IMG/VR virus record: IMGVR_UViG_3300042359_000853
Span: 124,001 to 188,000 of that record
Length of the DNA stretch: 64,000 nt
Reading direction: 5' to 3' (one strand)
The notes under the pieces were generated by a model, which saw only the letters and a list, made by a program, of their open reading frames with translations, was not told where the DNA came from and did no database searches. Below are positions 29,817-57,692 of the stretch, one piece after another. Within the stretch, counting starts at the first letter, position 1. Each line of letters opens with the position of its first letter. The translations under genes and the position numbers were made by a program.

Positions 29817-31940
29817 ATGAGACCAAGATCTATTGACGAAGTATGGCGGCAAATGCAAGTAGAAAAGCAACTACAAGAGCAGAGAAGATTCGAACAAGAA
29901 AGAAAAATGTGGGAACAAAGAGAAAGGCAAAGACAAGAATATCTCTTATCCATAAAAATGAATGAGAAGCTAGCACCGACAGTTCCTACTTCAGCAGCTG
30001 CTTCTGCTGGAGGAACAGTTCAGACGATTCAAGATCAAGACTTTCCTACTCTTTTTGGTGAAACACACATGATCACTTGGGCTGATGTATCAACAGATAC
30101 TTGGAAATACATCGTTCATAACTTCAATACTGGTGAGCTTTCTGAAATATTTGATACAGAATTGATATACGATAGTGGCAACGAATGGTATCTTTATGAT
30201 GAATGGCTGGCGGTTTCTGAAAAGGGGCATTCTGTTGTTTTCAGAAAGTCAGGAACCAATTTATATAAGATTTATTTTTTCAACGTAAATGGAGAACTCG
30301 TTGGTCAAAAAGATCTAGAAAGTCGCAAAGATTTTCAATATACCGAAAACGCACAGATATATGTGGGAGATTTGAACGGTCTAGGCACTGTTTATCATTT
30401 TGATGGTGATAATGTAAGAACTCATACGTTTGAGGGTCTGAGTGCATCTTCTATCGAAGTTGATGATTTTGGTGAAGATGATGTAACAAAAGATGGTAGC
30501 GTCATAATTGAGGCGCCAGATAATAGTAAAACATTCATAGCCAGGCCTAGTGGTGAGTTAGTAGAGATAACCTCTGATATCCAAGGTGCAAATCAAGTTT
30601 TATTAGATTATAACACAGATTTTTTATTTGCAGTAGATCAAGATCTTTGGGTAAAGTCGATTTCACAAGGGGGAGAGCTAAAAAATACGATGGATTTATC
30701 ACCTTATAATATAGAGAATTGGAATGAGATTTCTCTGTATGGTGATAACTGTGCTTACGTGCTTCTCACTTCGTATGATAGCTACAGAATGCTTGTTTCT
30801 TATGATGGTGATTCTAATCAGTTTGTTTCTATTACTTTTTCTGATTCTCTGATATATGATATCAGCTATCACGAAAGAAGCTGGCAATCGCCAAGACCTT
30901 ACTTCGGTAAAACTTTGATACTGACTACCTATCAGAGTAGAGCAGATAACTATATAAGTGGATTTGAGGGTTCAGGAGTAGAAATCAGTTGGTTACTGAA
31001 AAGTGCAGATGAATTTCAATCCTATATGTTTAGTGGAACTGTTTCATTTTTTGAAAGTGGTGGCAACTGGGTTGGTGATCGAACTTTTGCTATAGGTGAA
31101 AATCCAATGGTTATGTTCGCATACACACAAAGTGTTATTCAGGCAGGGTTTCTTCTATCTTCTGGATTTTTCACACAATCAACAGGCGTTACCTTGTCTC
31201 TCTGCTCAAATATTTGGGGAAAACCGATTGGCGATCATTCGTTTGCTGTTTTTGATGTTTTGGATGATAGAGTTTGGCAGGTCTATGATCAAAACTCTAT
31301 TGTTTCACAAACATCTTCTAGTTCTGCTTGGTCGTGGGGAACTAGTAACTGGGATGTCAATCGTTATGGAACACTTTTAGTTTTAGGTGGTGGTGGTAAT
31401 AATTTTGCTTACACAACAGAAATTGGATTGACTTCGGCACCAAGTGATATAAATATTATTTATAATAATGTGAATTGGGGCGACAGAACTGGTATTTCTA
31501 CTGAATATCAAATAGGCGTTCGTTATATTCCAGGTCAAGAGGGAAATGCTTACGTAGCTGGATTTTATGTTTTATCTAGGTCTGGTTTTTCTTCTTATGA
31601 AGAGTTCCCCTTTACTGGTCTTTCTCCTAGTATCCCACACACAATTTCTGGGATTGAAATAGGAACCGAAATTGTTTCTTTTAATTTGATAAATCAGGAT
31701 AATTCGAACTTAAGATGTATTGTTTATGACCTTTCTACACTTGGATTAATTGATGATTATGATACCGAACAATCTACCGATGTTTATATCCAATCTTGGA
31801 AAAACAGAGTAGCTGTTATTAAACAAAATGCTAATGAAAGACAGATTAAATTCATAGGAAAACACGGAATACAAACAAAAAAGGTTGATGCGAATAGTTT
31901 TTCAGATGAATCCAACGATCCAAGAGACAATGATGATTAA
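29817..31940 (+). CDS. Beta-rich (propeller-like) putative virion protein with N-terminal charged helix
   Basis: R/Q/E helix, SAAASAGG linker, then aromatic-rich beta strands. Confidence 0.55.
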   Translation: MRPRSIDEVWRQMQVEKQLQEQRRFEQERKMWEQRERQRQEYLLSIKMNEKLAPTVPTSAAASAGGTVQTIQDQDFPTLFGETHMITWADVSTDTWKYIVHNFNTGELSEIFDTELIYDSGNEWYLYDEWLAVSEKGHSVVFRKSGTNLYKIYFFNVNGELVGQKDLESRKDFQYTENAQIYVGDLNGLGTVYHFDGDNVRTHTFEGLSASSIEVDDFGEDDVTKDGSVIIEAPDNSKTFIARPSGELVEITSDIQGANQVLLDYNTDFLFAVDQDLWVKSISQGGELKNTMDLSPYNIENWNEISLYGDNCAYVLLTSYDSYRMLVSYDGDSNQFVSITFSDSLIYDISYHERSWQSPRPYFGKTLILTTYQSRADNYISGFEGSGVEISWLLKSADEFQSYMFSGTVSFFESGGNWVGDRTFAIGENPMVMFAYTQSVIQAGFLLSSGFFTQSTGVTLSLCSNIWGKPIGDHSFAVFDVLDDRVWQVYDQNSIVSQTSSSSAWSWGTSNWDVNRYGTLLVLGGGGNNFAYTTEIGLTSAPSDINIIYNNVNWGDRTGISTEYQIGVRYIPGQEGNAYVAGFYVLSRSGFSSYEEFPFTGLSPSIPHTISGIEIGTEIVSFNLINQDNSNLRCIVYDLSTLGLIDDYDTEQSTDVYIQSWKNRVAVIKQNANERQIKFIGKHGIQTKKVDANSFSDESNDPRDNDD

Positions 31941-32665
31941 GGAGTCGCTACCCCTTTTTTAGAAACTACTAGAGCAGACATTTCGTTGGCAAATCCAATC
32001 GATGATATAACATCTCCTGTTTTTAGATATTCTATAGAAAAACTAGCTAAAAAAGTATCACCTGCGCCTGAAACATCGATAGTTTCTAGAGGGTTCTTTT
32101 GAGGAAATATAACACCTCTATACCTACTGCCACGAGAGCCTAGTGTTATAATCAGGTTATTATCATCTAGATGTTTGTTGATATCTCTTTCACTATCGTT
32201 TAGCTTAATAAAGGTGAATAGACTAGCTAGTTGCTGATCTAACTTTTTCTTTGTATCAAGTATAGATATCTTAGAACTTCTAGCTATAAGCTCTAGAATT
32301 TGGGAATTCAGAAATCCCTTATTGTAATCAGAAACTATCACTAGATCGAAAGTTGATAAATCTGGTAAGTTTTCAAGAGTCTTACAGGGATTATTTTCAC
32401 CTTCATCAATTCTCAAAAACATATGGTTTGATTTTTTATCAACATATCTTGTCTTAGTAATCAAATCTTCTTGATGTAGGGAAAAAATATCAACTTCTTT
32501 ACTCAATGCTTCTAAATTTTTAGCAACATTTCCGGCCATTCCTGGATTTTCTATGATCTCTACCGGTTTTACAACTGGAACAGGCGCCTCTGGTGATAAT
32601 CTTGATGATGAGCAGTAGATAAATCTATCCAAACAAATCTCACCAATCACTGCTATTTTCTTCAC
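31937..32665 (-). CDS. rfaE: D-glycero-D-manno-heptose-7-phosphate kinase (HldE/RfaE domain I, PfkB family)
   Basis: IGEICLD..RLSPEAPVPVV..GMAGNVA..VSDYNKG..DVSGAGDT. Confidence 0.9.
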   Translation of the reverse strand: MKKIAVIGEICLDRFIYCSSSRLSPEAPVPVVKPVEIIENPGMAGNVAKNLEALSKEVDIFSLHQEDLITKTRYVDKKSNHMFLRIDEGENNPCKTLENLPDLSTFDLVIVSDYNKGFLNSQILELIARSSKISILDTKKKLDQQLASLFTFIKLNDSERDINKHLDDNNLIITLGSRGSRYRGVIFPQKNPLETIDVSGAGDTFLASFSIEYLKTGDVISSIGFANEMSALVVSKKGVATP

Positions 32666-32921
32666 CTAAAATATAGTTTATTTTTTTATCTCTAAACTTC
32701 TTTTTACCATTTTTTATAGGTAGAATATAATGATTCCAACTTTGGAGAGATATCCAGTTAGATTTTGATACATCTATTTTTTCACCTTTACAAAATATCT
32801 GAAACTTATTATCATTGCTGCTACTTAAAATAATATCATGACCTTGAGGTAGAGTAACATCTCTATCACCATCTCTAAAGGTAACATCTCTCCAAACATG
32901 ATAGTAGCTGGTGTGATCCAT
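32640..32921 (-). CDS. Small hypothetical with C-terminal RDKKINYIL motif
   Basis: ORF in operon. Confidence 0.6.
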   Translation of the reverse strand: MDHTSYYHVWRDVTFRDGDRDVTLPQGHDIILSSSNDNKFQIFCKGEKIDVSKSNWISLQSWNHYILPIKNGKKKFRDKKINYILGEENSSDW

Positions 32922-32922
32922 A

Positions 32923-33216
32923 TTATTCTTCTATTATTTTAGAGATTTGTTTATCTCTTGTATAGCTCGTGAACCAATCTAAACGAATACATCTTTTATC
33001 ATTATCTAAACGAAAGATATGACCTTCTCTCGATCCAGTCTCGATGATTGATATTGTTTCTGGTTTTGCGTCTGAGAGTTTAATCCAATTCATCCAATCT
33101 AAATTAACAAAATCAAATTTTTGACCCTTTTTCAGAGGAATCTCTAGAAAAGCTCTTGGATCGATTGTTGGAAACGAAAGAGTAAAATCTTCAAGTGCTA
33201 TATAAGTAATCGTCAT
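32923..33216 (-). CDS. Small hypothetical with C-terminal RDKQISKII motif
   Basis: ORF in operon. Confidence 0.6.
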   Translation of the reverse strand: MTITYIALEDFTLSFPTIDPRAFLEIPLKKGQKFDFVNLDWMNWIKLSDAKPETISIIETGSREGHIFRLDNDKRCIRLDWFTSYTRDKQISKIIEE

Positions 33217-33217
33217 T

Positions 33218-34570
33218 CTAAATCTCTGATAAAAGTTTTTTTAGTTTTTGTAAATCTTGTAAATATAGAGATTTTATTTCTTTTTGAGATAAAGTTTTTA
33301 GCTCTTCTTTCTTATCTTCTAGGTCTTTCAATATCTTTTCGTAGATCTCTTTTACTAGAGATGAAATAGGCATACGAAGTAGATATTCGTAAGAAGAATC
33401 AACTTTTGTGAAATTTAGTTCTTGAAGTCTTTGTGTTAGGTCTTTTTTTGGAATATTCATCACTAAGATTTCTTTTTCAATAACACCTTTAATAAATCTA
33501 GCCCGGTTGGATAGAATTAAAATTTCCTGTTCAAGATTTTTTATCAATAAATCTTTTCTTTTTTGATAAAATTGAAGTCTGAAATTTGTAAAATAATCAA
33601 GAATCTGTGTATCTGACTCAAAGACTTTCAGTTTTCCGAACTCATCAAGAGTAGTAAAGATCTCTGTAGAGTATTCCTCAAGTTTTAGAAGTTTGATGAT
33701 TTGCTCATCATCAAGAGTTCCCATAACTGATTTATCCCACCTCACCGTATAGTTGATGTCTTCTTTGCAGTTATCATCCCAAGAAGAGATAATACCACGA
33801 GCTTGAAGATCATCCAAAACTTCTTCGTATTTTTCCCAGGTAAACGAGGGTGGTATTTCTAAAATTTGAGTTGAAATTTTATTGATGTTCTTGAAGACAC
33901 CACGAATAATCCATCTTTTATCGTTGGCTGCGTCAGGTATAAACTCACCACGAAAACCAGCAATTTGTGGTATGAGTTTTTTTGGACTCTTACCACCTAG
34001 TATATCAATAACAGAATTAACAACATCTAAAGGATTTCTATTTAAGATATTCGATGAGAATCCAACCGCAATACCTGAGCCACCGTTTATTAAAATAGTC
34101 GGAACTATAGGTAAGAAATATTTAGGCTCTATTTGTTGGCCTTCTTCCCAGAGGTATTCAAGTAGCTCTTCATCTTTATACAGATGAAAAAATATCGAAG
34201 AAAGTTTAGTAGCTATGTATCTTGGAGCAGAAGCCTCAGGAGCTCTAAGTGATCCAAACTGACCATGCTCTTCTAAAAGAGGTAGATTATTCTTAAACTT
34301 TTGAGCCATTTGAGTGATAGCTCCATCTAGTGATGATGAACCGTGATGATAGAAGCTTTCAGAGGAAACTTTTCCTGAAAGTTGAAAGATTTTGAGTGGT
34401 TTGGCAGATGGTGTTTTCCAAATGGAAGAAGCTGTGTGAATAATCTTTCTTGCTACCGGTTTAAATCCATCAACAACCGACGCGATAGCTCTATTTTCAA
34501 TAGAATATAGAGCGAAAGCTTTGTATTCATTATCTAGAAATTGAGAGATTGTTTTTTGTCCAGGTTTCAA
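33218..34570 (-). CDS. DNA topoisomerase II medium subunit (T4 gp52-like)
   Basis: RAI..VDGFKP, YHHGSSSL, GQFGS..SAPRYI (catalytic Tyr), GIAVGFS. Confidence 0.95.
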   Translation of the reverse strand: MKPGQKTISQFLDNEYKAFALYSIENRAIASVVDGFKPVARKIIHTASSIWKTPSAKPLKIFQLSGKVSSESFYHHGSSSLDGAITQMAQKFKNNLPLLEEHGQFGSLRAPEASAPRYIATKLSSIFFHLYKDEELLEYLWEEGQQIEPKYFLPIVPTILINGGSGIAVGFSSNILNRNPLDVVNSVIDILGGKSPKKLIPQIAGFRGEFIPDAANDKRWIIRGVFKNINKISTQILEIPPSFTWEKYEEVLDDLQARGIISSWDDNCKEDINYTVRWDKSVMGTLDDEQIIKLLKLEEYSTEIFTTLDEFGKLKVFESDTQILDYFTNFRLQFYQKRKDLLIKNLEQEILILSNRARFIKGVIEKEILVMNIPKKDLTQRLQELNFTKVDSSYEYLLRMPISSLVKEIYEKILKDLEDKKEELKTLSQKEIKSLYLQDLQKLKKLLSEI

Positions 34571-34619
34571 GAAGTTTTTTCTTTTGGTATGAGTAAGTTC
34601 GTAAAAAGTTGTAAATAGA

Positions 34620-34814
34620 TTAGATCTGCTCTAACCATTCACTGAATCTTAAAACCTTCCTCTCTGATACCTTTTGTGGAAGTTCTCTGTAATCTACGTC
34701 AGTCCATTCCTTATCGAAAACCCAGTGGTATTTCTTGGGAGCTTTCTTTTTAGAACCCCACTTATTTCTAAGAGCCCAGATAAGTTTATATTGTTTTTTT
34801 GATGTTGCTGGCAT
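34620..34814 (-). CDS. Small basic protein, probable internal/core protein
   Basis: MPATSKKQ..., C-terminal KVLRFSEWLE motif. Confidence 0.6.
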   Translation of the reverse strand: MPATSKKQYKLIWALRNKWGSKKKAPKKYHWVFDKEWTDVDYRELPQKVSERKVLRFSEWLEQI

Positions 34815-34844
34815 GACTTATTGTTTTTTTGGTATATATAAAAT

Positions 34845-36701
34845 ATGGCAAAAGAAAAAAAGATAGAAGAAAAGTATGTTGTCCTTGATCATATAGAGCA
34901 CATACTACTTAGACCACAAACCTACATCGGAGCAAATAAACCACATACTCAAAAAAGATGGATACCCCAGGGATCCAAGATGATACAAGAGGAACTCACT
35001 TATGTTCCGAGTTTTCTAAAAATATTTGATGAGATTATCTCAAACTCAGTTGATGAAAGTAAAAGAAATAAAAAACTTAACCGAATAGATGTAAATATTG
35101 ATAAAAAGACCGGCGAAATATCAGTTTCTGATAACGGTGGAATACCGGTGGTCATTCATAAAACTCATAATCAAATGGTTCCCGAGGTTATTTTTGGAAA
35201 TCTTATGTCTGGCTCAAACTACGATGATACAGAAGAAAGAGTAGTGATGGGTCTCAATGGATTAGGATCGAAACTCACCAACGTTTTTTCTAAAAAGTTT
35301 GTAGTTCAAACCTGTGATGGTAAAAATGGATTTCTTCAAGTTTTTTCCCAGAATATGAGAGAAAGAACACAACCCACTATAACAAAAGGAGGCACACCAG
35401 GAACGAAGATCACTTATCTTCCTGATCTAGATAGGTTTGGTCTAAAAAAACTCGATACAGCTCATTACAATCTATTACATAAACGAGTGGTTGATATTGC
35501 TGGATGTAATCCATCAGTCAAGATTTTTTTCTGTGGTAGTGAAATCAAATGTAAATCTTTCGAGGATTATGTAAGGTGGTATCGTCAAGATTATTACTAC
35601 GAAAAATCAACCGACGGTCTTTGGTCAGTGGCTGTTGCTCCTTCTAGTGAAGGTTTTTCCCAGGTAAGTTTTGTCAATGGATCAGACACTTATGATGGTG
35701 GATCACATGTTGATTATATAACAAGTGGTATTATTCAACCACTCAGAGATTACTTCATGAAAAAATTCAAAGTAGATGTAAAACCTTCAGAGATCAAAAA
35801 TCACTTTCAGATTTTTCTTTCTTCAACAATTGTGAATCCTAGTTTTTCCTCTCAAACAAAAGAAAAACTTATTACTGAACCTAAAGATTGGGGTTATACT
35901 TTTACTATTTCACCTAAAATGATAGGTTGGATACTAAGATCCGAAATTGTAAAATCTATATCTGATTGGATCATTCAGAAAAAAGCAGCTGATCAAAATA
36001 AAATGCAACGACAGCTCAATAAACAAGTTGATAATCTTAAAGTTGAAAAGTTAGTTGATGCCAAGGCTAAAGATAGATGGAGGTGTTCGCTCGGTATTTT
36101 TGAGGGAGATTCGGCTAGTAACTCGTTTAGAAAATACAGAGATCCACAAACACAAGGATCTTTTTCTCTCAAAGGTAAGTTTATAAATGTAAGCGATTTA
36201 GCTCTTCAGAAAATGACTGATAATAAAGAGCTTGTAAATCTTATGTCAGCTATTGGCCTAAAACTTGGGCAAAAAGCAACCTTGAAAACCTTGAGATGGG
36301 GTCGTATTATATTCTACGCCGATCAAGACCCCGATGGTAACTCTATTGTAGCTCTTCTTCTGAACTTTTTCTATAAGTTTTGGCCTGAACTTTTTGATAT
36401 GAACTTCGTTTTCAAAGCAGAGACACCTCTCATGGTTGTGAAATCATCGAAACTTACAGAAGATCTATGGTTCTATTCTATGCAAGAGTTTGATAAATGG
36501 TCTGGTGGCAAAAGCTTGAAAGATTATACGATTACCTATAAAAAAGGACTTGGTGCTCTCGAAGATGATGAATATAAGAAGATTATAAAAACACCCAACT
36601 TAGTTAAAATTTCAAGTGATGAACTTTCTACTAAAAAACTAGATATTTGGTTTGGAAAAAACTCAGCTCTTAGAAAAGAGGAGTTATTTGATGTGGTTTG
36701 A
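34845..36701 (+). CDS. DNA topoisomerase II large subunit (gp39+gp60 fused; GHKL + TOPRIM)
   Basis: EHILLRPQTYIG, EIISNSVDE, DNGGIP, GLNGLGSK, EGDSA, LKGK, DQDPDG, YKKGLG. Confidence 0.96.
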   Translation: MAKEKKIEEKYVVLDHIEHILLRPQTYIGANKPHTQKRWIPQGSKMIQEELTYVPSFLKIFDEIISNSVDESKRNKKLNRIDVNIDKKTGEISVSDNGGIPVVIHKTHNQMVPEVIFGNLMSGSNYDDTEERVVMGLNGLGSKLTNVFSKKFVVQTCDGKNGFLQVFSQNMRERTQPTITKGGTPGTKITYLPDLDRFGLKKLDTAHYNLLHKRVVDIAGCNPSVKIFFCGSEIKCKSFEDYVRWYRQDYYYEKSTDGLWSVAVAPSSEGFSQVSFVNGSDTYDGGSHVDYITSGIIQPLRDYFMKKFKVDVKPSEIKNHFQIFLSSTIVNPSFSSQTKEKLITEPKDWGYTFTISPKMIGWILRSEIVKSISDWIIQKKAADQNKMQRQLNKQVDNLKVEKLVDAKAKDRWRCSLGIFEGDSASNSFRKYRDPQTQGSFSLKGKFINVSDLALQKMTDNKELVNLMSAIGLKLGQKATLKTLRWGRIIFYADQDPDGNSIVALLLNFFYKFWPELFDMNFVFKAETPLMVVKSSKLTEDLWFYSMQEFDKWSGGKSLKDYTITYKKGLGALEDDEYKKIIKTPNLVKISSDELSTKKLDIWFGKNSALRKEELFDVV

Positions 36702-37592
36702 TCCAAGTAAGTAGTTACTAGAATCTCCGGCAAAGAGTGTAGTATAACCTAGTTTCTCTTCTAGGAATGTTTTAGTTTGACCGGTAAAATCTTCAATCCA
36801 AATGTGTGGTCTATGATTCACGATAGTATTTATAGATCCTCTAATAAGTTCTAACTCGTGACCTTCTACATCTATTTTCATAAAAGAAATATTATCAAAA
36901 CCAAAATCATCCAAAATTGAGCTCTGAACAAGCTCACCACTTTCGGATATAGCAGTTGAACCCCTATTCCATGATGCTGGATTTTCCATAAATAAAGTTC
37001 CTCTTTTAGAAGAGAGAGCGGTCTTGAATGTATGAATATTTTTTATTTTTTTCGTGTTTGTTAGAAGAAGTTCGTAATTTGCGCTACTTGGTTCAAAAGA
37101 ATAGATATTACTTTCTGGAAAATATTTATGAAACATCAAGCTATGATTTCCAATATTGGCACCACAATCTATAATGTTTTTAATATTATTCAGATATGGT
37201 AGAAATTGAAAGAAAAGATCAGATTCCCAAAATTTATTGAATTTTACGATATACTCAGAAATCAAATCGCCGGCATGTAACGTCAAATCGAATGATTCTA
37301 AACGAAAAGTTTTTTTATTTTTATCCTCTTCAAAATAAATTGCCTCTTCTAGTAGGATATTTCCCTCAGAAACAATACTGACAAAAACACCCTCTATTTT
37401 TGTATTTTCAAATATTTCTTTATTGAGATTAATTTCAACATTCCCGTTAGTAGGTATCCAGATCCATCCAGAATAAAATAGATCAATTTTATTCAGATTA
37501 AATACCGTAATATCTGAAGTAATAGGTTGGGTATTTATATTGTTAATTATAAGTTTGTGATTGATATAGTCTATTGTTGTTAGAAGTATCAT
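36684..37592 (-). CDS. FkbM-family methyltransferase
   Basis: IDCGANIGNHS, SFEP, FMKIDVEGHE. Confidence 0.9.
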   Translation of the reverse strand: MILLTTIDYINHKLIINNINTQPITSDITVFNLNKIDLFYSGWIWIPTNGNVEINLNKEIFENTKIEGVFVSIVSEGNILLEEAIYFEEDKNKKTFRLESFDLTLHAGDLISEYIVKFNKFWESDLFFQFLPYLNNIKNIIDCGANIGNHSLMFHKYFPESNIYSFEPSSANYELLLTNTKKIKNIHTFKTALSSKRGTLFMENPASWNRGSTAISESGELVQSSILDDFGFDNISFMKIDVEGHELELIRGSINTIVNHRPHIWIEDFTGQTKTFLEEKLGYTTLFAGDSSNYLLGSNHIK

Positions 37593-37661
37593 ATAAAAGG
37601 ATTGTTCGTAATTTAAGAATATTGGATTTAATATCTAGTTATTTTTATATATAGGATTTAT

Positions 37662-40536: not shown

Positions 40537-41661
40537 ATGAGTAAAATATTTTTAGTAGGTGATATACACCTAGGTATGGGTTGGCCTAATAGTTATACTA
40601 AATGGTCAAAGGTCCATCAAGATTATTTTTCCGATTTTCTATTTCCACTTCTTGAAAGTCAGTTAAGTAGCCAAGATATTATTGTATTACTTGGTGATTT
40701 TTTTGATAATCGTGAAGTGATACCTATAGATACCTTAAATTATGGAAAAAGTGTTATAGAAAGATTATCTCGGTTAGCTCCAACACACATCATCGTTGGA
40801 AATCACGATCTTTGGACTAGAAGTTCATCCGAGATCAATTCAGTCAATATTTTTGGATGGATACCGAATGTTTCTATTTATCAAAAAACTTCCCAAATCC
40901 AATATAGAGATAAGAAGATTTGTATGATGCCCTATATTCACCATAAAGAAGAACAAATCAAAGAAATCGAAAAATTTAGAGATAGTAACTATTTATTTTG
41001 TCATTCAGATCTGAATGGATGTAAAATGCACTTAACATCGACAGCGCATAGAAACTCGGATAAAATTGATCTAGATGAGTTCAGGTCTTTTGAAAAAGTA
41101 AGATCAGGTCATATTCACATTCGTCAAGAGACAGGTATATTCAAGTTTGTTGGTTCTATTTTTCAAATGGATAGAGCTGATATGGGAGACCAGAAAGGTA
41201 TTTGGATTATTGATACTGATGATGATTCCGAGGTTTTCATCCCCAACACGAAATCTCCTATTTTCGAAAAGGTTTATGTTAAAACTCCTGAAGATGTTGA
41301 AGATTTATCTAACCTAAAAGATTCTAAAAACTGGATAGATCTCTATATCTCAAACTCACTTCTTATCAACAACAGAAAACTCAGAAGAAAGTTGGAGATT
41401 CTTTTAGAAACAATTAACTTTTTATCGGTAAGTTATATTGATGATATTCAAGTTTTAGAAAAATTAGAAGGTCAAAATGAGTCAGGAGTCTTGGACGAAG
41501 AGGTCATAGCAAGAGCTATCAATCTTGAACTCGAATATACAGAAGTTATTAAAAACTATATAGAAGAACAAAAGTGGGAATCAAAAAAGATCAAATCTGG
41601 TATTCTTACTGAGTTTGACGAAATTAGTAGAATATATCAAGATGGATTTCAAAAAAATTAA
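40537..41661 (+). CDS. Recombination nuclease (T4 gp47 / Mre11-SbcD-like)
   Basis: GDIHLG, LGDFFDNR, VGNHD, FCH, SGHIH. Confidence 0.92.
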   Translation: MSKIFLVGDIHLGMGWPNSYTKWSKVHQDYFSDFLFPLLESQLSSQDIIVLLGDFFDNREVIPIDTLNYGKSVIERLSRLAPTHIIVGNHDLWTRSSSEINSVNIFGWIPNVSIYQKTSQIQYRDKKICMMPYIHHKEEQIKEIEKFRDSNYLFCHSDLNGCKMHLTSTAHRNSDKIDLDEFRSFEKVRSGHIHIRQETGIFKFVGSIFQMDRADMGDQKGIWIIDTDDDSEVFIPNTKSPIFEKVYVKTPEDVEDLSNLKDSKNWIDLYISNSLLINNRKLRRKLEILLETINFLSVSYIDDIQVLEKLEGQNESGVLDEEVIARAINLELEYTEVIKNYIEEQKWESKKIKSGILTEFDEISRIYQDGFQKN

Positions 41662-41664: not shown

Positions 41665-42471
41665 ATGATACTTGTTACTGGATACAAAGGATTTATTGGT
41701 AAAAACCTATTTGATAAACTCATACAACTCAACTACTCCATCACAGGTTTAGATAGTGAATATTTTCTAGAAGAAGATTGGCAAGGTTGGCTAAAAAAGT
41801 ACTTGAATGATAAATCACCAAGTTTCGTATTTCATGTAGGTGCGTGCTCCGATACACTAGAGACTGATGTAAATTATATGCTTACTAGAAACTATGAATC
41901 TACTAGAATCATTTCTTCTTGGTGCGAAAGAAACGGTGTGGGTTTGGTTTATTCTTCCTCGGCTGCTAACTATGGATCGACTGGTCATCTTCCTACAAAT
42001 CTTTATGGATGGAGTAAAAAAATAGCTGAAGATTTTGTATTATTAAAAGGTGGGGTTGCTCTTCGATATTTCAATGCCTTCGGACCTGGTGAAGAAGGTA
42101 AAGGTAAAATGGCTTCTGTAGCCTATCAATCATGGATTAGAAATAAAGTGGGTGAGAAGATTAAACTCTTTCCAGGCCGTCCAACTCGAGATTTTATCTA
42201 TATAAGAGATATTGTAGAGGCGAATATATCTGCTATGAAAAACTACAGATCTATTTTTGGTAATTACTATGATATAGGAACTGGAGTTTCATCACCATTT
42301 GAAGATGTTTTAGAAAATTTAGATATACCTTTCACCTATACCGATAGTCTAGAAATACCAAAAGGATATCAATTTTTCACACAAGCTAATTCATCGAAAT
42401 TTCTAAGAGGTTGGGAACCCAGATGGACTCTCTCAACTGCTCTAGCCGATTATAGAAAATATTTAGATTAA
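41665..42471 (+). CDS. hldD: ADP-L-glycero-D-manno-heptose 6-epimerase-like
   Basis: TGYKGFIG, FHVGACSDT, YSSSAANYG, YGWSK, LRYFN, GKGKMASV, RDFIY. Confidence 0.85.
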   Translation: MILVTGYKGFIGKNLFDKLIQLNYSITGLDSEYFLEEDWQGWLKKYLNDKSPSFVFHVGACSDTLETDVNYMLTRNYESTRIISSWCERNGVGLVYSSSAANYGSTGHLPTNLYGWSKKIAEDFVLLKGGVALRYFNAFGPGEEGKGKMASVAYQSWIRNKVGEKIKLFPGRPTRDFIYIRDIVEANISAMKNYRSIFGNYYDIGTGVSSPFEDVLENLDIPFTYTDSLEIPKGYQFFTQANSSKFLRGWEPRWTLSTALADYRKYLD

Positions 42472-48753: not shown

Positions 48754-49103
48754 TGGTGGAGGTGCTGGGATTCGAACCCAGGTTTCTACATTTACCTAAA
48801 TAATCAATCATTCACAAGCTTAGAACTCTTTTCTAAGAGAACCAACTATCGGATTTTATCGAAGAACCTTCCGAAAAAACTTTTGAGGCTATTTATAGAG
48901 TTACCTCATTCTCGGAAACGTCTAGGCTACGGCCAATCTGTTTGCCTTTAGGATGTTGTTGCGTAGGGCGAATACTAAGTCTTCAACGCTTCCTACTTCA
49001 TTCGTGTTGCCACTTAAAGTTTTCATACAACTTATGAATCGGTGAGTATGATCCGATGCTTGCTTGATTACCCGAATAAATGAGTCAAAAGCCATTCACC
49101 CCC
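48754..49103 (-). ncRNA. ssrA: tmRNA
   Basis: 5' GGGGGTGAATGGCTTTTGAC, 3' GGGTTCGAATCCCAGCACCTCCACCA; 7-bp acceptor stem with G3.U wobble and encoded CCA; internal tag ORF 48922-49011 ending LAVA*. Confidence 0.93.
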
Positions 49104-49435: not shown

Positions 49436-49440
49436 ATTGT

Positions 49441-51099: not shown

Positions 51100-51107
51100 G
51101 GTTTTAT

Positions 51108-51605: not shown

Positions 51606-51630
51606 ACAGGGTATATATTATTTTCAAAAC

Positions 51631-51960: not shown

Positions 51961-52005
51961 TAAACAATCGGTTTTTAATATATATATAAAATTTAAAGGA
52001 ATAAA

Positions 52006-53322: not shown

Positions 53323-53345
53323 ACTTTTAATCTATAATATCATAC
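53322..53345 (+). promoter_or_regulatory. Representative putative middle promoter AACTTTT-N12-CATAC
   Basis: Same 19-nt AAC-to-CATA offset as the motifs at 55182-55204 and upstream of gp52 (34587-34610, minus). Confidence 0.5.
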
Positions 53346-53444
53346 CTATTAGGTATTATAAATAATTATATTTTTTATAGTAAAATATAGAAAAAAAGTT
53401 GAAAAAATACTACTTTACAGATTTATATTTTAATATATAGATCT

Positions 53445-54014
53445 ATGAAATATAAAGTAAGTGAATATGCTAAATTGAAAAACGTTACCTACCGAACCGT
53501 TTGGAACTGGATAAAATCAAATAAGATAGACTATCAAACTACAAACACCGGTGGTCTGGTTATAGTTGAAGAAGATCCCAATTCAAATAAAGAGGTAGCA
53601 GTTTATGCTCGTGTTTCTTCATCAGAGAATAAAGATAATCTAGAAAGACAGAAAAATAGATTATTGGACTATTGTGCTTCTAGAGGATATAAAGTTTCTA
53701 GTATAGTAACAGAGATTGGATCTGGATTGAACGATAAAAGACCAAAATTAGAAAAAATTCTAACAAATAGATCTATAAGTATAATTGTAGTTGAACATCG
53801 GGATAGATTATCAAGATTTGGATTTAATTATATAGAAAAACTATTAAATTCAAATGATAGAAGGATAGAGGTAATAAATGAGCCTCTTAATGAAAAAGAA
53901 GATTTAATACAAGACTTTGTATCTATAATTACTAGTTTTACCGCTAGATTGTATGGACAAAGAAGAAGTAAAAGAAGAACCGAATTTCTTATAAAAAATC
54001 TACAAAGTGAATGA
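53445..54014 (+). CDS. tnpA: IS607 transposase (MerR-like HTH + serine recombinase)
   Basis: VTYRTVWNW; VYARVSS..LERQ; EIGSGLN; EHRDRLSRFG; ARLYG. Confidence 0.95.
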   Translation: MKYKVSEYAKLKNVTYRTVWNWIKSNKIDYQTTNTGGLVIVEEDPNSNKEVAVYARVSSSENKDNLERQKNRLLDYCASRGYKVSSIVTEIGSGLNDKRPKLEKILTNRSISIIVVEHRDRLSRFGFNYIEKLLNSNDRRIEVINEPLNEKEDLIQDFVSIITSFTARLYGQRRSKRRTEFLIKNLQSE

Positions 54015-55180
54015 TCCTAGTTGAAAAGCACATAATTAGATCAGGTAAATATTTCAATCAACTAATGGAAGTTACTAGATTGAGTAAAAATCTTTATAAT
54101 TCTGGTTTGTATGCTGTGAGGCAGCACTATTTTGAATACAAGAAGTTCTTAAATTATGTAAATCTTAATAATATGTTTGTTGAACAGAAACAACAAGATT
54201 ATTACAAACTACCAGCAAAGGTTAGCCAACAAACACTGAAAATGGTGGAACAAAATTTCAAATCATTTTTTGGATTACTAAAATCTGAAAAAACTAAAAA
54301 GGTAAAAATACCTAAATATCTGGATAAAAATTCCAGTTTTTTAACAATTTGGACAAATCAAGCAGTTTCTCTCAAAAAGAAGGGTTACTTAAAGCTATCA
54401 GGAACTGATGTCTATATCAAAACAGATATTGATCATATCAATCAAGTTAGAGTTGTTCCTAGAAATAATGAGTTAGTAGTAGAGATATTATATGAAGTCC
54501 GGGAAAATGATTTAAAGAAAGATAACGGAAAATATTCATCTATAGATCTTGGCATCAATAATCTCATGACTTTATCGGGAAACACAACAAAACCTATTAT
54601 AGTCAATGGGAAACCACTAAAATCTATTAATCAGTATTACAACAAGAAAAAATCCGAAATTCAGGGTAAATTAGAAACAATCAACAAAACAAAAAAGAGC
54701 AAAAAATTAAATAAACTAACAAACAAAAGAAACAACAAAATAAATGATTATCTACACAAATCAAGTAAAATAATTATCAATCATTTAGTTTCCAAAGATA
54801 TATGTACTTTAATAGTTGGATACAATCAATACTGGAAACAAGAGATAAATATTGGAAAAAAGAATAATCAGAATTTTGTTTCAATTCCCTATCTAAAATT
54901 ATTAAATATGTTAGAATACAAATGTAAAAAAGAAGGCATTAACTTTGTCAAAAACGAGGAGAGTTATACATCCAAGTGCTCGTTTATAGATGGTGAGGAA
55001 ATTAAAAAACATACAAAATATTTAGGTAAAAGAATAAAAAGAGGATTATTCGAGAGCGCGTCTGGTAAATTGATAAATGCGGATTTGAATGGATCTCTAA
55101 ATATTCTCAAAAAAGTAGTTGGGGAATTTCAGTACCCAATAGAGGTGTGTAGCACGCCAAAAGTTATTAATTTAGCTTAG
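54011..55180 (+). CDS. tnpB: TnpB RNA-guided endonuclease
   Basis: SKNLYN, SIDLGINN (RuvC-I), DYLHKSS, EESYTSKC, NADLNGSLNI (RuvC-III). Confidence 0.95.
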   Translation: MILVEKHIIRSGKYFNQLMEVTRLSKNLYNSGLYAVRQHYFEYKKFLNYVNLNNMFVEQKQQDYYKLPAKVSQQTLKMVEQNFKSFFGLLKSEKTKKVKIPKYLDKNSSFLTIWTNQAVSLKKKGYLKLSGTDVYIKTDIDHINQVRVVPRNNELVVEILYEVRENDLKKDNGKYSSIDLGINNLMTLSGNTTKPIIVNGKPLKSINQYYNKKKSEIQGKLETINKTKKSKKLNKLTNKRNNKINDYLHKSSKIIINHLVSKDICTLIVGYNQYWKQEINIGKKNNQNFVSIPYLKLLNMLEYKCKKEGINFVKNEESYTSKCSFIDGEEIKKHTKYLGKRIKRGLFESASGKLINADLNGSLNILKKVVGEFQYPIEVCSTPKVINLA

Positions 55181-55216
55181 AAACTTTTTCTATGGATTTC
55201 CATAAAATTAGTAGCT

Positions 55217-56374: not shown

Positions 56375-56398
56375 TCTTCTTTTTTAATATATACCTTC

Positions 56399-56938
56399 AT
56401 GTTTGATTCTCTACATCAGTCAAGTTTTATTATCTTTTTCGATTATGATCACGCTCAAAAATCTATTATAGAATCCATTCTTTATTCAAGAAATTGGTTT
56501 ATTCGTAATATATCTAAAGTGGACGATACACTTACAAGTGAAGCTCTTTTTTGCTACACACTTGATGATGTAAACTTGAAATCTGAAGCTCTGTATCTTT
56601 TACAAAAAACAGGCCTTCGTCACTGCGTTGTTTCTATTGAAAACTCTCTATTCATACTGACTCGTTCGAATGAATCTATAAAAATTTCTAGAGTAGTAGA
56701 TGAGAACGATATCGAGCCGGTGATATTATACTTTATCATTCAAAATATGCCCTATAGATTTGTAAGAGAAAAAACTTATAATCTGGTTTCTATGAAAGAA
56801 GATTTAGAAAATGGAACCCAAGTTCAAGTTTTAGACGGTAAGGTGTGGATTGACATGGTTGTAGAAGATTTAGATAGTGAATGGAAAAACCTCTACGGAA
56901 TCCTATCTAAATACGGCAGGGTTCGTATTCAAAGATAA
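56399..56938 (+). CDS. Hypothetical protein
   Basis: ORF with late motif upstream. Confidence 0.6.
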   Translation: MFDSLHQSSFIIFFDYDHAQKSIIESILYSRNWFIRNISKVDDTLTSEALFCYTLDDVNLKSEALYLLQKTGLRHCVVSIENSLFILTRSNESIKISRVVDENDIEPVILYFIIQNMPYRFVREKTYNLVSMKEDLENGTQVQVLDGKVWIDMVVEDLDSEWKNLYGILSKYGRVRIQR

Positions 56939-56945
56939 AAAATAT

Positions 56946-57692
56946 TTAGGCCAATCGATTAGAAAGGCCTATTTTAGGTCTCGAGTTGTTGATATAAGCC
57001 TCTAAGTTCTTATCATCGATCATCCTGAATTGATTGAATAGTTGAAGATTTTTCTGGTAGAGTTCCATATCGGGTTGGCCTCTGTGGTGCCAAAAATGAA
57101 ATGCTCGATAGGGCATTTGGTGGTTAGATAGAAGACGAGATACTTTAACACTCTGCGCATCGTCTTCGGCTCCCCAACCGATATATTCTTCAGGCCATCC
57201 GGCAATTCTTTCGATAGCAGGTCTTCTAAAAATAGTAATACCTCCACAGAAAGGAACTTTTTGATGATCGTTTTCACCTCTACCTGGACGGTTGATTCCT
57301 AAAATTTGATTGAAATCAAGATTATTCTCCCACTCCTCTAGATCAACTACTGATTTGTAGGGATTCACTACATCGTAGAACTGCGTTTGATTGAGTGAAT
57401 CAATTAGTTCATTTGGATTCATAATCACATCGGCATCTCCAAAGACCACAACCTGACTAGTTGAGTGTTTAAGACCTACGTTATAGGCTAAAGATTTAAT
57501 GAAAGGCCCGTCGTTATACATAAAAATATGTTTACCTGGTAGGTTTAGATGATCGATTTTGGTGTTTCTATCTTGTTCTACTACAATAATTTCAACACCC
57601 TGAAAACCGGACACCCATTCAAGGACTTTTCTTAGGTTCATAATCCTATCTTGTGAAAATCTGAAAGCTATAATAAATGAGAATGGAGGCAC
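56946..57692 (-). CDS. GT-A glycosyltransferase (GT2/GT7 galactosyltransferase-like)
   Basis: IVVEQD, YNVG, FGDADV (DxD), GG, GWGAEDD, HFWH. Confidence 0.88.
   Translation of the reverse strand: MPPFSFIIAFRFSQDRIMNLRKVLEWVSGFQGVEIIVVEQDRNTKIDHLNLPGKHIFMYNDGPFIKSLAYNVGLKHSTSQVVVFGDADVIMNPNELIDSLNQTQFYDVVNPYKSVVDLEEWENNLDFNQILGINRPGRGENDHQKVPFCGGITIFRRPAIERIAGWPEEYIGWGAEDDAQSVKVSRLLSNHQMPYRAFHFWHHRGQPDMELYQKNLQLFNQFRMIDDKNLEAYINNSRPKIGLSNRLA

What the first reader, a model, noticed from the sequence alone, without database searches (positions are those of the whole stretch)
31937..57692. Dispersed ADP-heptose and glycan-modification toolkit
HldE kinase domain (31937), HldD epimerase (41665), FkbM methyltransferase (36684) and a GT7-like transferase (56946) are scattered. 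HldE is co-oriented downstream of gp52 and HldD follows gp47, so both are embedded in DNA-metabolism operons. Many Bacteroidota LPS cores lack heptose, so the sugar may be for phage use: heptosylation of Thr-rich virion proteins, DNA hypermodification, or receptor masking. GmhA, GmhB and the adenylyltransferase are not in this window.
Basis: partly seen in the sequence, partly recalled or inferred. Interest (0 to 1): 0.7.

Follow-up and report, generated by a model that had tools for sequence, protein, structure and literature searches.

The report
Lake megaphage heptose and protein-glycosylation kit
A huge freshwater phage carries scattered genes for making activated heptose sugar, and elsewhere in its genome an enzyme of the kind that bacteria use to attach heptose to proteins, so it probably sugar-coats proteins, a modification not yet described for phages.

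Summary
All four flagged genes are real and sit exactly where stated. The kinase (w31937-32665) and the epimerase (w41665-42471) are short, virus-type relatives of the heptose-7-phosphate kinase HldE-I/HldA and of HldD. Both score below the curated equivalog cut-offs but keep every catalytic motif.

In 12 of 12 other viral loci these two genes are adjacent, in a cassette known from T4-like cyanophages. Here they lie 9 kb apart, at the ends of the gp52 and gp47 operons of a Mahaphage-like lake megaphage. The record is a 227-kb fragment, about 39% complete.

No GmhA, GmhB or cytidylyltransferase-type adenylyltransferase occurs in the fragment. The toolkit is much larger than the window, with at least 16 glycan genes. 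The key one lies about 93 kb upstream of the window: a 772-aa fusion of a GT4 domain with a complete TibC-like protein O-heptosyltransferase (profile E 5e-73, TM 0.8; catalytic Asp and all four iron-finger Cys kept).

It does not support DNA modification. The premise that Bacteroidota lack heptose is weak: 77 of 121 sampled genomes carry the kinase. The target protein and the nucleotidyl-transfer step remain unknown.

The parts
31937..32665 (-). Short (242 aa) virus-type HldE-domain-I/HldA-like sugar-phosphate kinase, the last gene of the gp52 operon.
   Evidence: PfkB 62.8 bits. rfaE_dom_I is the best NCBIfam model, at 124 bits against a cut-off of 345. phrog_8133 2.7e-70. HldA is the only PDB sequence hit. 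An AF2 model at pLDDT 78.7 has HldA as its top 7 Foldseek hits. The invariant motifs RxSPEAPVP, GMAGNVAKN, KxNxxE and DVxGAGDT are kept. 45% identical to the S-SM2 kinase.
32640..33216 (-). Two small ORFs (93 aa and 97 aa) of unknown function between gp52 and the kinase.
   Evidence: No Pfam, NCBIfam or PHROG match. Tightly packed with their neighbours. Metatranscriptome contigs bridge both junctions.
33218..34570 (-). gp52-like topoisomerase II subunit (context: the operon that carries the kinase).
   Evidence: DNA_topoisoIV 276 bits. 54-56% identical to the 634-642 kb huge phages LR745206 and LR756502. In those relatives no kinase follows gp52.
36684..37592 (-). FkbM-family methyltransferase, probably a sugar O-methyltransferase.
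   Evidence: TIGR01444 84.7 bits, phrog_8156. Homologs lie within 10 kb of the TibC-like gene in 13 of 80 viral loci.
40537..41661 (+). gp47-like Mre11-type phosphoesterase (context: the operon that carries the epimerase).
   Evidence: Metallophos 39.7 bits. The epimerase starts 3 nt after its stop.
41665..42471 (+). Short (268 aa) HldD-like ADP-heptose 6-epimerase homolog.
   Evidence: TIGR02197 164 bits against a cut-off of 274.6. The top four PDB sequence hits are all HldD/AGME, at 1e-27 to 6e-21; the next hit is at 5e-12. The FHxGACSxTxExD, YxxxK and K178 equivalents are kept. 31.9% identical to the S-SM2 epimerase and 30.6% to the P-SSM2 epimerase.
56946..57692 (-). GT-A glycosyltransferase (GT2 / GT7C-like), near the portal gene.
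   Evidence: Glyco_transf_7C 34.5 bits, GT2 28.1 bits, phrog_1721. T4-type portal at w59476-61182.
7183..11112 (+). 1309-aa protein with four Laminin_G_3 lectin-like domains and a Thr/Pro-rich linker. It is a candidate glycan acceptor (inferred).
   Evidence: Laminin_G_3 166 bits. 63% Ser+Thr over 60 residues, with a TPTQTPT-type linker.

Best explanation
The window lies in a 227-kb fragment of a freshwater-lake, Mahaphage-like megaphage. Its host is probably in the Bacteroidota.

The kinase and the epimerase are the virus-specific short forms of the heptose-7-phosphate kinase (HldE-I/HldA) and of the ADP-heptose 6-epimerase (HldD). They belong to a cassette that is contiguous in T4-like cyanophages and other aquatic phages. 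In this phage the cassette has been split, and the two genes sit at the 3' ends of the gp52 and gp47 replication/recombination operons.

The two genes are one arm of a genome-wide glycan toolkit of at least 16 genes. The toolkit has three parts:
- the two in-window genes plus the in-window FkbM methyltransferase and GT-A transferase;
- a 16-kb nucleotide-sugar and glycosyltransferase cluster at genome 56971-72474;
- a two-gene module at genome 29271-34654, made of a 1018-aa GT1+FkbM protein and a 772-aa GT4 + TibC-like protein O-heptosyltransferase.

Proposed mechanism (inferred):
1. Host sedoheptulose-7-P and the host isomerase supply heptose-7-P.
2. The phage kinase makes the 1,7-bisphosphate.
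3. A phosphatase removes the 7-phosphate. This could be the host GmhB or the phage's minimal HAD enzyme at genome 62142-62447.
4. A nucleotidyltransferase activates the sugar. It was not found in the fragment and could be a host enzyme, lie in the missing ~60% of the genome, or be the tandem NTP_transferase.
5. The HldD-like enzyme converts D,D-heptose to L,D-heptose.
6. The TibC-like domain transfers heptose to hydroxyl residues of proteins. It has Ser at the site that makes AAH accept both heptose epimers.
7. The fused or adjacent GT4/GT1/GT-A transferases and the FkbM methyltransferases extend and O-methylate the glycan.

The most likely acceptors are the phage's own large fibre- or adhesin-like proteins.

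Shown: gene identities, motif conservation, folds, contexts and co-occurrence. Inferred: substrates, the order of steps and the acceptor.
For: Kinase and epimerase identity
- Homologs form a conserved cassette. In 12 of 12 IMG/VR loci the epimerase directly follows the kinase. In most loci a cupin, a 2OG oxygenase and a CTP_transf_like nucleotidyltransferase precede the kinase. The same cassette occurs in S-SM2 and P-SSM2.
- Viral heptose enzymes have been reported to make ADP-heptose in vitro (Tang et al. 2024, as summarised in PMC11461863 and PMC11573728).

Link to the out-of-window cluster
- In S-SM2 the kinase and epimerase sit inside one glycan cluster. Seven further genes of that cluster have homologs in this phage's out-of-window 16-kb cluster. 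The six clearest are the tandem nucleotidyltransferase (45%), a GT61-like transferase (41%), a class II aldolase (43%), the HAD enzyme (62%), SSM2_208 (44%) and a capsule-biosynthesis domain (23%).

TibC-like heptosyltransferase
- Single-sequence search gives E 5e-33 against TibC. A three-sequence profile gives 5e-73 over TibC residues 62-385 of 406, and TibC is the only PDB family hit.
- In the AF2 model the top 21 Foldseek hits are all TibC, with TM by target 0.77-0.81.
- The equivalents of D110, T226, K230, W305 and all four iron-finger Cys are invariant in 13-14 viral homologs (residue roles from PMC4358343).
- The residue equivalent to TibC P300 is Ser, as in AAH, which accepts L,D-heptose. 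This fits the presence of an HldD-like gene.

Co-occurrence
- The TibC-like gene and a heptose-type kinase occur together in this phage and in the complete 735-kb LR756501 genome, which also conserves the 1018-aa + 772-aa gene pair. They also occur together in 5 of 35 large viral records that carry a TibC-like gene. One of those records has the full NT-kinase-epimerase cassette.

Candidate acceptors
- At least six large proteins have Thr/Pro-rich linkers, and two of these carry lectin-like or DUF285 domains.

The arrangement is real
- A near-identical second contig shows the same gene order, and at least 20 lake-water runs hold w31900-36700 (kinase to gp39) at 0.89-1.00 of sampled words.
Against: - No GmhA, GmhB or cytidylyltransferase-type adenylyltransferase is in the 227 kb, so the pathway cannot be closed on the phage side.
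- The kinase and the epimerase score well below the equivalog cut-offs and are about 25% and 15% shorter than the bacterial enzymes.
- One of TibC's four sugar-binding residues, R286, is Val here and varies across the viral family. Donor specificity is therefore not assured.
- The kinase-TibC link is only partial. GenBank cyanophages that carry the cassette have no TibC-like hit. Thirty of 35 large TibC-positive viral records lack the kinase, although most of these are fragments.
- TibC modifies Ser in autotransporter beta-helices, not Thr. No autotransporter-like acceptor lies next to the gene.
- No direct evidence identifies the acceptor.
- Transcription evidence is weak: a few 163-280-nt metatranscriptome contigs lie on the kinase region and none on the epimerase.
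Confidence: 0.45

Rival explanations
1. Host-surface remodelling. The toolkit changes the infected cell's envelope rather than the virion. It could act on LPS core or O-antigen, on capsule, or on host surface proteins or adhesins through the TibC-like enzyme. The effect would be to mask receptors and exclude superinfecting phages.
For: - This is the long-standing hypothesis for the homologous 'LPS' gene clusters of P-SSM2 (PMC1079782).
- In bacteria, BAHT enzymes modify cell-surface autotransporters (PMC4358343).
- An MsbA/PglK-type ABC exporter lies at w27405-29216, 2.7 kb from the kinase.
- The kinase and epimerase sit in replication/recombination operons, which in T4 are expressed before the late genes. 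That timing would suit host takeover (this expression timing is assumed from T4 and was not tested here).
- The host phylum commonly has the heptose kinase itself, so heptose-bearing host structures probably exist.
Against: - No Wzx/Wzy-type, lipid-carrier priming, or GT9 LPS heptosyltransferase genes were found in the parts of the record that were scanned. The only GT9-like signal is the TibC-like domain.
- In a lytic megaphage the benefit of receptor masking is short-lived.
- In Microcystis phage Mel-JY01 the TibC-like fusion sits beside a structural protein and near the terminase.
Confidence: 0.3
2. Non-heptose chemistry. The short PfkB kinase and the SDR act on a different sugar phosphate or nucleotide sugar, and the TibC-like domain uses another donor. 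On this reading 'ADP-heptose' is a homology label only.
For: - Both enzymes score far below the equivalog cut-offs.
- The canonical adenylyltransferase, isomerase and phosphatase are missing.
- The R286 equivalent is not conserved.
- The co-conserved S-SM2-type genes hint at other sugars or polyol-phosphates. They include a tandem NTP_transferase with an IspD-like half, a class II aldolase, a PRK-like kinase and a protein with a GDPD-like fold.
Against: - The kinase keeps the HldE-specific lid motif RxSPEAPVPV. HldA is its only PDB sequence hit and its top 7 structural hits.
- The epimerase's four best PDB hits are all HldD, about 15 orders of magnitude better in E-value than the next hit.
- Related viral heptose enzymes were reported active in making ADP-heptose.
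Confidence: 0.15
3. DNA hypermodification. Because the two genes sit in DNA-metabolism operons, the heptose (or another sugar) is attached to phage DNA bases.
For: - Operon context with the gp52 and gp47 homologs.
- Phage glycosyltransferases that modify DNA are known (cited in PMC12619734).
Against: - No thymidylate-synthase-type hydroxymethylase is in the record, and no DNA-glucosyltransferase-type family turned up in the scans.
- The relatives LR756502 and LR745206 share the same topoisomerase genes without the kinase.
- In all 12 other viral loci the kinase-epimerase pair lies in sugar cassettes, not replication modules.
- The record is only about 39% complete, so the absence of such genes is not conclusive.
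Confidence: 0.05
4. Decaying remnants. The cassette was broken up by rearrangement, and the scattered kinase and epimerase are no longer functional.
For: - The adjacency that is universal elsewhere is lost here, and the nucleotidyltransferase partner is missing.
Against: - Both ORFs are intact and keep all family-invariant catalytic residues.
- The gene order of the kinase-to-epimerase stretch is the same in a near-identical second contig, and w31900-36700 (kinase to gp39) is held by at least 20 lake metagenome runs from 2020-2025.
- Metatranscriptome contigs at 100% identity cover the kinase.
Confidence: 0.05

Closest known systems
T4-like cyanophage heptose / 'LPS' cassette (T4-GC 304-308 of P-SSM2, S-SM2, S-CAM1/3 and others)
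   Same: The kinase (36-45% identical), the epimerase (about 31%) and the small HAD protein (41-62%) are orthologous. Five further S-SM2 cluster genes are shared.
   Different: In the cyanophages the genes are contiguous and include a cytidylyltransferase-type nucleotidyltransferase and a cupin. Here the kinase and epimerase are 9 kb apart inside replication operons, and the nucleotidyltransferase and cupin were not found. The host and phage lineage also differ: a Mahaphage-like megaphage, probably on Bacteroidota. GenBank cyanophages gave no TibC-like hit.
[quoted passage not shown]
   Same: The kinase and epimerase steps are represented by clear homologs with intact catalytic motifs.
   Different: Both enzymes are shortened and fall below the equivalog cut-offs. 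GmhA, GmhB and HldC/HldE-II were not found in the 227 kb. The only phage candidate for the phosphatase step is a 101-aa capless HAD protein.
BAHT family: TibC and AAH autotransporter O-heptosyltransferases of E. coli (PDB 4RAP, 4RB4)
   Same: The whole protomer fold matches (TM 0.8). The catalytic Asp, three of four sugar-binding residues and the four-Cys iron finger are conserved.
   Different: The phage enzyme is fused to an N-terminal GT4 domain and paired with a GT1+FkbM giant protein. No autotransporter lies next to it. The R286 equivalent is Val. The P300 equivalent is Ser, as in AAH. The enzyme is encoded by a virus, and 378 IMG/VR stretches carry relatives.
Mycobacteriophage virion glycosylation (Freeman et al. 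2023, cited in PMC12619734)
   Same: Phage-encoded glycosyltransferases proposed to decorate the phage's own structural proteins.
   Different: The enzyme families and the sugar differ. Here the phage also encodes steps of nucleotide-sugar synthesis, and there is no experimental evidence.

Membership tests
HldE domain I / HldA heptose-7-phosphate kinase (TIGR02198) | PfkB/ribokinase fold | tested here: met
   Pfam PfkB 62.8 bits. AF2 model at pLDDT 78.7, with HldA as the top 7 Foldseek PDB hits.
HldE domain I / HldA heptose-7-phosphate kinase (TIGR02198) | N-terminal lid motif (RxSPEAPVPV), plus the NxxE motif and the DxxGAGD catalytic / anion-hole motif | tested here: met
   All are present, and all are invariant in 8 viral homologs.
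HldE domain I / HldA heptose-7-phosphate kinase (TIGR02198) | Score above the curated equivalog cut-off, with full length of about 315 aa | tested here: not met
   124 bits against a cut-off of 345. The protein is 242 aa, with internal deletions.
HldE domain I / HldA heptose-7-phosphate kinase (TIGR02198) | [quoted passage not shown] | not testable with these tools
   Needs an enzyme assay.
HldD ADP-heptose 6-epimerase (TIGR02197) | SDR fold with a GxxGxxG motif, the catalytic Tyr-x3-Lys pair, and the second base Lys178 | tested here: met
   VTGYKGFIG, YGWSK and the GKGK Lys all align with E. coli and Burkholderia HldD.
HldD ADP-heptose 6-epimerase (TIGR02197) | Score above the curated equivalog cut-off | tested here: not met
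   164.4 bits against a cut-off of 274.6. About 17 residues of the N-terminal cofactor region are missing. Even so, the top four PDB hits are all HldD.
Complete ADP-heptose pathway encoded by the phage | GmhA isomerase, GmhB phosphatase and HldC/HldE-II adenylyltransferase all present | tested here: not met
   No SIS_2, GmhB_yaeD, rfaE_dom_II or CTP_transf_like match in the 227-kb record. The record is only about 39% complete. A 101-aa HAD phosphatase and a tandem NTP_transferase are possible substitutes.
BAHT (TibC/AAH) protein O-heptosyltransferase; out-of-window gene at genome 29271-31589 | GT-B catalytic domain with an N-terminal beta-barrel (whole-protomer fold) | tested here: met
   The profile hits TibC residues 62-385 at 5e-73. 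Foldseek TM by target is 0.77-0.81 over 457-475 alignment columns.
BAHT (TibC/AAH) protein O-heptosyltransferase; out-of-window gene at genome 29271-31589 | Catalytic base Asp110 and iron-finger Cys339/342/358/370 | tested here: met
   D504, C721, C724, C741 and C753 are invariant in the viral family (residue roles from PMC4358343).
BAHT (TibC/AAH) protein O-heptosyltransferase; out-of-window gene at genome 29271-31589 | All four ADP-heptose-binding residues (T226, K230, R286, W305) | tested here: inconclusive
   The T226, K230 and W305 equivalents are kept. The R286 equivalent is Val here, Arg in LR756501 and Ile in Mel-JY01.
BAHT (TibC/AAH) protein O-heptosyltransferase; out-of-window gene at genome 29271-31589 | Iron-bound dodecamer; paired with an autotransporter substrate | not testable with these tools
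   The oligomeric state and metal content need biochemistry. No autotransporter gene is adjacent; the conserved neighbour is instead a GT1+FkbM protein.
FkbM methyltransferase (TIGR01444) | FkbM domain above the cut-off | tested here: met
   84.7 bits against a cut-off of 37.7.
GT7 (beta-1,4-galactosyltransferase-like) | GT7 catalytic region over its full length | tested here: inconclusive
   Only a 38-residue Glyco_transf_7C stretch matches (34.5 bits), plus GT2 at 28 bits. The protein is best called a generic GT-A transferase.

The most novel reading that the evidence does not exclude
Aquatic phages, including this megaphage, run a virus-encoded protein O-heptosylation system. A TibC-like iron-finger heptosyltransferase is fused or paired with GT4/GT1 and FkbM domains, and in some lineages it is fed by the phage's own heptose kinase and epimerase. 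The system would coat the phage's own fibre or adhesin proteins with (methyl-)heptose glycans. This would be the first viral protein heptosylation. It would also be widespread (378 IMG/VR stretches) and would give the unexplained viral NDP-heptose genes a physiological role.
Probability: 0.35. Interest if true: 0.8.

Novelty: new variant of a known kind. Interest (0 to 1): 0.62.

Why it matters
The authors who showed that viral enzymes can make NDP-heptose state that the reason viruses make it is unknown (PMC11573728). For twenty years, cyanophage 'LPS genes' have been explained only by speculation about changes to the cell surface.

A phage genome that holds the heptose kinase and epimerase together with a complete TibC-like protein heptosyltransferase offers a concrete and testable use for the sugar: glycosylation of proteins. 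The transferase family proved abundant in viral contigs, and my literature searches linked it to no phage.

If virion proteins are the target, phage glycan coats would extend beyond mycobacteriophages and would involve a sugar that is also an innate-immune agonist.

The work also corrects an annotation. The cyanophage 'phosphoheptose isomerase' T4-GC 306 is a minimal HAD phosphatase. That makes it a candidate for the phosphatase step that was reported as absent from viruses.

Tried and rejected
- Near-identity DNA search of w31000-43500 against GenBank phages: no match.
- Searches of the whole record for rfaE_dom_II, SIS_2, GmhB, CTP_transf_like and thymidylate synthase: nothing usable.
- The weak rfaE_dom_II signal at genome 144933-145097 (13 bits, with stop codons inside) was rejected as noise.
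- The sigma-70 promoter and terminator scan of w31000-43600 did not exceed shuffled controls and says nothing about the operons.
- RNA evidence is too sparse to claim expression. Four metatranscriptome runs gave one short contig each on the kinase/gp52 stretch and none on the epimerase.
- I considered that P-SSM2's 'phosphoheptose isomerase' homolog could be the missing GmhA. I rejected this because it carries HAD motifs I-IV and has no SIS match.
- I considered the marginal GT9 Pfam hit (20.7-22.7 bits) as evidence for an LPS heptosyltransferase. The PDB profile search hit only TibC and not WaaC/WaaF, so the domain is filed as BAHT-like.
I dropped that row and did not resend it.
- The Tang et al. 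2024 Science paper itself is not in the library. Only two commentaries on it could be read.

Full report
**1. Observation**

- w31937-32665(-) encodes a 242-aa PfkB-family kinase. Its best curated model is rfaE_dom_I, the heptose-7-phosphate kinase, at 124 bits against a cut-off of 345. It matches the function-unknown phage family phrog_8133 at 2.7e-70.
- w41665-42471(+) encodes a 268-aa SDR. Its best model is heptose_epim (HldD), at 164 bits against a cut-off of 274.6.
- w36684-37592(-) is an FkbM methyltransferase.
- w56946-57692(-) is a GT-A transferase with a short GT7C-like stretch.

The operon statements are correct. On the minus strand the order is the gp52-like topoisomerase subunit, two small ORFs, then the kinase, with 1-nt gaps or overlaps. 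On the plus strand the epimerase starts 3 nt after the gp47-like phosphoesterase.

**2. How good are the kinase and epimerase calls?**

Kinase:
- It keeps the HldE-specific lid motif (RLSPEAPVPV), the NxxE motif and the DVSGAGDT catalytic motif. All are invariant in eight viral homologs.
- Its only PDB sequence hit is Burkholderia HldA.
- An AlphaFold model (pLDDT 78.7) has HldA as its top seven structural hits, ahead of ribokinases.

Epimerase:
- Its four best PDB hits are all HldD, at 1e-27 to 6e-21. The next hit is at 5e-12.
- The Tyr-x3-Lys pair and the second catalytic Lys (E. coli K178) are conserved.

Both enzymes are therefore specific relatives of the heptose enzymes. Both are also shortened and fall below the equivalog thresholds, so their activity is inferred, not shown.

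**3. What the genome is**

The window is G000:C1:124001-188000 of a 227,583-bp IMG/VR virus record that CheckV estimates to be 39% complete.

The topoisomerase subunits are 54-56% identical to the 634-642-kb huge phages LR745206 and LR756502. These belong to the Mahaphage clade, whose largest members were predicted to infect Bacteroidetes (PMC7162821).

The phage's ClpB-like gene finds Flavobacteriales and Bacteroidia MAGs as its best cellular hits, including a lake bin. At least 20 lake-water metagenome runs from 2020-2025 hold w31900-36700, and a second near-identical contig has the same gene order from the kinase to the epimerase. The arrangement is therefore real and recurrent.

**4. Relation to known phage heptose genes**

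The kinase family is the T4-like cyanophage cluster T4-GC 305, and the epimerase is T4-GC 308. In all 12 other IMG/VR loci recovered with the kinase, the epimerase follows it directly. In most of them a cupin, a 2OG oxygenase and a 133-aa CTP_transf_like nucleotidyltransferase precede it.

The cassette is known from earlier work:
- It was annotated as LPS or heptose genes in cyanophages (PMC1079782, PMC7378029).
- Viral heptose enzymes were reported to synthesise ADP-heptose in vitro, with the phosphatase step said to be absent from viruses and the physiological role unknown (PMC11461863, PMC11573728).
- PfkB kinases and NAD epimerases are also noted as widespread in aquatic huge phages (bioRxiv 10.64898/2026.10.24.761521).

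What differs here is the architecture. The pair is split by 9 kb and attached to two replication/recombination operons. The relatives LR756502 and LR745206 have the same topoisomerase pair without the kinase.

**5.

No SIS/GmhA, GmhB, rfaE domain II or any CTP_transf_like protein occurs in the 227 kb. Absence from a record that is 39% complete is weak evidence. Complete relatives carry several small cytidylyltransferase-like ORFs elsewhere in their genomes.

Two possible substitutes were found outside the window.

The first is a 101-aa ORF at genome 62142-62447. It is 41-62% identical to the proteins that cyanophage records call 'phosphoheptose isomerase' (T4-GC 306). In fact it carries HAD motifs I-IV (DIDET, TAR, K..P, FIDDK) and weakly matches a capsule-biosynthesis phosphatase family. 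It is a phosphatase, not an isomerase, and is a candidate for the GmhB step. In S-SM2 and in this phage it sits beside a class II aldolase, so it may instead belong to another branch of sugar metabolism.

The second is a 524-aa tandem NTP_transferase, 45% identical to S-SM2's 'dN-sugar pyrophosphorylase'.

**6. The toolkit is far larger than the window**

Genome 56971-72474(-) is a co-oriented cluster. It contains:
- the tandem nucleotidyltransferase;
- TylF-like and FkbM methyltransferases;
- the HAD protein;
- a class II aldolase;
- a PRK-like kinase fusion;
- GT61-like, GT2 (two copies) and GT10 fucosyltransferase-like enzymes;
- several unknown ORFs, one of which has a GDPD-like fold.

In S-SM2 the kinase and epimerase lie inside one contiguous cluster, together with seven genes that have homologs here. 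Five of those seven are 41-62% identical. The other two matches are weak: a capsule-biosynthesis domain at 23% and a transferase at 28%. This argues that the two in-window genes belong functionally with this out-of-window cluster.

**7. The key finding outside the window**

A scan for GT9 heptosyltransferases gave a marginal hit in a 772-aa ORF at genome 29271-31589. The evidence that its C-terminal part is TibC-like is strong:
- Its C-terminal 298 residues match TibC, the E. coli autotransporter protein O-heptosyltransferase, at 5e-33.
- A three-sequence viral profile matches TibC residues 62-385 of 406 at 5e-73, with no other PDB family hit.
- An AlphaFold model (pLDDT 71) places a GT4-type GT-B domain at residues 1-315 and a whole TibC-like protomer at about 340-772. 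The top 21 Foldseek hits are all TibC, with TM by target 0.77-0.81.

Residues, compared with those defined for TibC (PMC4358343):
- The catalytic Asp110, and T226, K230 and W305, are conserved, as are the four iron-finger cysteines. All are invariant in 13-14 viral homologs.
- R286 is Val here and varies across the family. This is a caveat for donor specificity.
- The stereoselectivity position is Pro300 in TibC, which makes it specific for D,D-heptose. It is Ser in AAH, which accepts D,D- and L,D-heptose. It is Ser here, which fits a phage that also encodes an HldD-like epimerase.

The upstream neighbour is a 1018-aa GT1+FkbM protein. The two-gene module is conserved in the complete 735-kb LR756501 genome.

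**8. How general is the TibC-like enzyme, and is it linked to heptose synthesis?**

- IMG/VR holds 378 stretches that encode TibC-like relatives. Among the best 80 loci, the domain is usually part of a 700-1450-aa multidomain ORF. In 62 of the 80, a homolog of the 1018-aa partner lies within 10 kb. In 13 of the 80, a homolog of the window's FkbM does.
- In GenBank phages, only LR756501/3, LR756504 and Microcystis phage Mel-JY01 have the domain. In Mel-JY01 it is fused to FkbM, sits beside a structural protein, and is annotated only as a methyltransferase.
- Two literature searches found no paper linking TibC or heptosylation to phage-encoded enzymes.
- A heptose-type kinase co-occurs with the TibC-like gene in this phage, in LR756501 (a full-length kinase, 306 bits) and in 5 of 35 viral records of at least 70 kb that carry a TibC-like gene. 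Two of those five records have an adjacent nucleotidyltransferase, and one has the full NT-kinase-epimerase cassette.
- LR756502 and LR745206 have neither the kinase nor the TibC-like gene.

The link is only partial. Cyanophages that carry the cassette gave no TibC-like hit, and most TibC-positive records lack the kinase, although most of those records are fragments.

**9. Host premise**

All five Bacteroidota MAGs nearest to the phage's ClpB-like gene carry a roughly 335-aa rfaE_dom_I kinase scoring 320-341 bits. In an even sample of 121 genomes of that phylum, 77 have a match at E <= 1e-60 and 60 pass the curated cut-off.

So the statement that Bacteroidota lack heptose holds for only a third to a half of the sampled genomes. 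It cannot carry the argument that the sugar must be for phage use. The phage genes may instead boost or redirect a host pathway.

**10. Candidate acceptors and other targets**

Six large proteins in the record have linkers in which Ser+Thr make up 57-65% of a 60-residue window. One is in the window (w7183-11112) and has four Laminin_G_3 domains. Another has DUF285 repeats. These look like fibres or adhesins, and glycosylation of such linkers is plausible. However, TibC modifies Ser in beta-helices, so the acceptor is unknown.

For DNA modification I found no support: there is no hydroxymethylase-type enzyme in the record.

For host-envelope remodelling, the MsbA-like ABC exporter at w27405-29216 is suggestive.

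**11. Verdict**

The flagged genes are a rearranged copy of a known aquatic-phage heptose cassette. Taken alone, they would be a new member of a known kind. Combined with a virus-encoded TibC-like protein heptosyltransferase module, they point to a phage protein-heptosylation system that appears to be undescribed, which makes this a new variant of known kinds. Substrates, acceptor and the nucleotidyl-transfer step all remain to be shown.

Noticed in passing
G000:C1:29271-34654 (outside the window; L022:13271-18654): A two-gene module: a 1018-aa GT1+FkbM protein and a 772-aa fusion of GT4 with a TibC-like protein O-heptosyltransferase. It is conserved in the 735-kb phage LR756501, and 378 IMG/VR stretches carry relatives of the TibC-like domain.
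   Followed up: yes
G000:C1:62142-62447 (L003:6142-6447:-); also P-SSM2 PSSM2_311 and S-SM2 SSM2_207/210: The cyanophage family T4-GC 306 is annotated 'phosphoheptose isomerase'. It is really a minimal (~100-aa) capless HAD phosphatase with motifs DIDxT, TAR, K..P and FIDDK. It is a candidate for the viral GmhB step, or a partner of the adjacent class II aldolase.
   Followed up: partly
G000:C1:56971-72474 (L003): A 16-kb co-oriented glycan cluster. It holds a tandem NTP_transferase, TylF-like and FkbM methyltransferases, a class II aldolase, a PRK-like kinase fusion, GT61-like, GT2 (two copies) and GT10 fucosyltransferase-like genes, and a virus-specific 165-aa protein with a GDPD-like fold. 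It probably makes a second activated sugar or polyol-phosphate of unknown identity.
   Followed up: partly
window 27405-29216 (+): A phage-encoded half-size ABC exporter with at least 4 TM segments plus a nucleotide-binding domain. Its best match is MsbA (lipid A flippase), at 266 bits against a cut-off of 602; PglK and glucan exporters also match. It lies 2.7 kb from the kinase.
   Followed up: partly
window 48754-49103 (-): A tmRNA gene (Rfam RF00023, 65 bits; also found by ARAGORN) with an unusually long predicted tag peptide. tmRNA genes are typical of huge phages.
   Followed up: partly
window 53445-55180 (+): An IS607-like pair inside the phage genome: a serine resolvase (189 aa) followed by an OrfB/TnpB protein with a Cas12f-like TNB domain (389 aa).
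   Followed up: no
window 47710-48651 (-): A D12-class N6-adenine DNA methyltransferase (Dam-like), next to the tmRNA gene.
   Followed up: no
G000:C1:72471-74600 (L003:16471-18600:-): A phage-encoded ClpB-type double-AAA chaperone (709 aa). Its best cellular hits are Flavobacteriales and Bacteroidia MAGs at 55-63% identity. It was used here as a clue to the host.
   Followed up: partly
L036 (IMGVR_UViG_GVMAG-M-3300009155-74_000001): A contig labelled as a giant-virus MAG encodes a 1322-aa ORF containing a TibC-like domain. A cytidylyltransferase-type nucleotidyltransferase homolog lies on the same 6.9-kb contig.
   Followed up: no
LR756501.1 209213-210175 (W01): The complete 735-kb phage has a full-length, Bacteroidota-like rfaE_dom_I kinase (306 bits) standing alone. 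It has no rfaE_dom_II, so heptose genes are dispersed in that genome too. Its glycan region at 308-326 kb shares a split transketolase-like gene with S-SM2 (44-54% identical).
   Followed up: partly
window 32347-33256: Short contigs (163-280 nt; three at 100% identity, one about 98.6%) from four freshwater metatranscriptome runs lie on the kinase and bridge the kinase/93-aa ORF and 97-aa ORF/gp52 junctions. No such contig lies on the epimerase. This is too sparse to prove transcription.
   Followed up: partly
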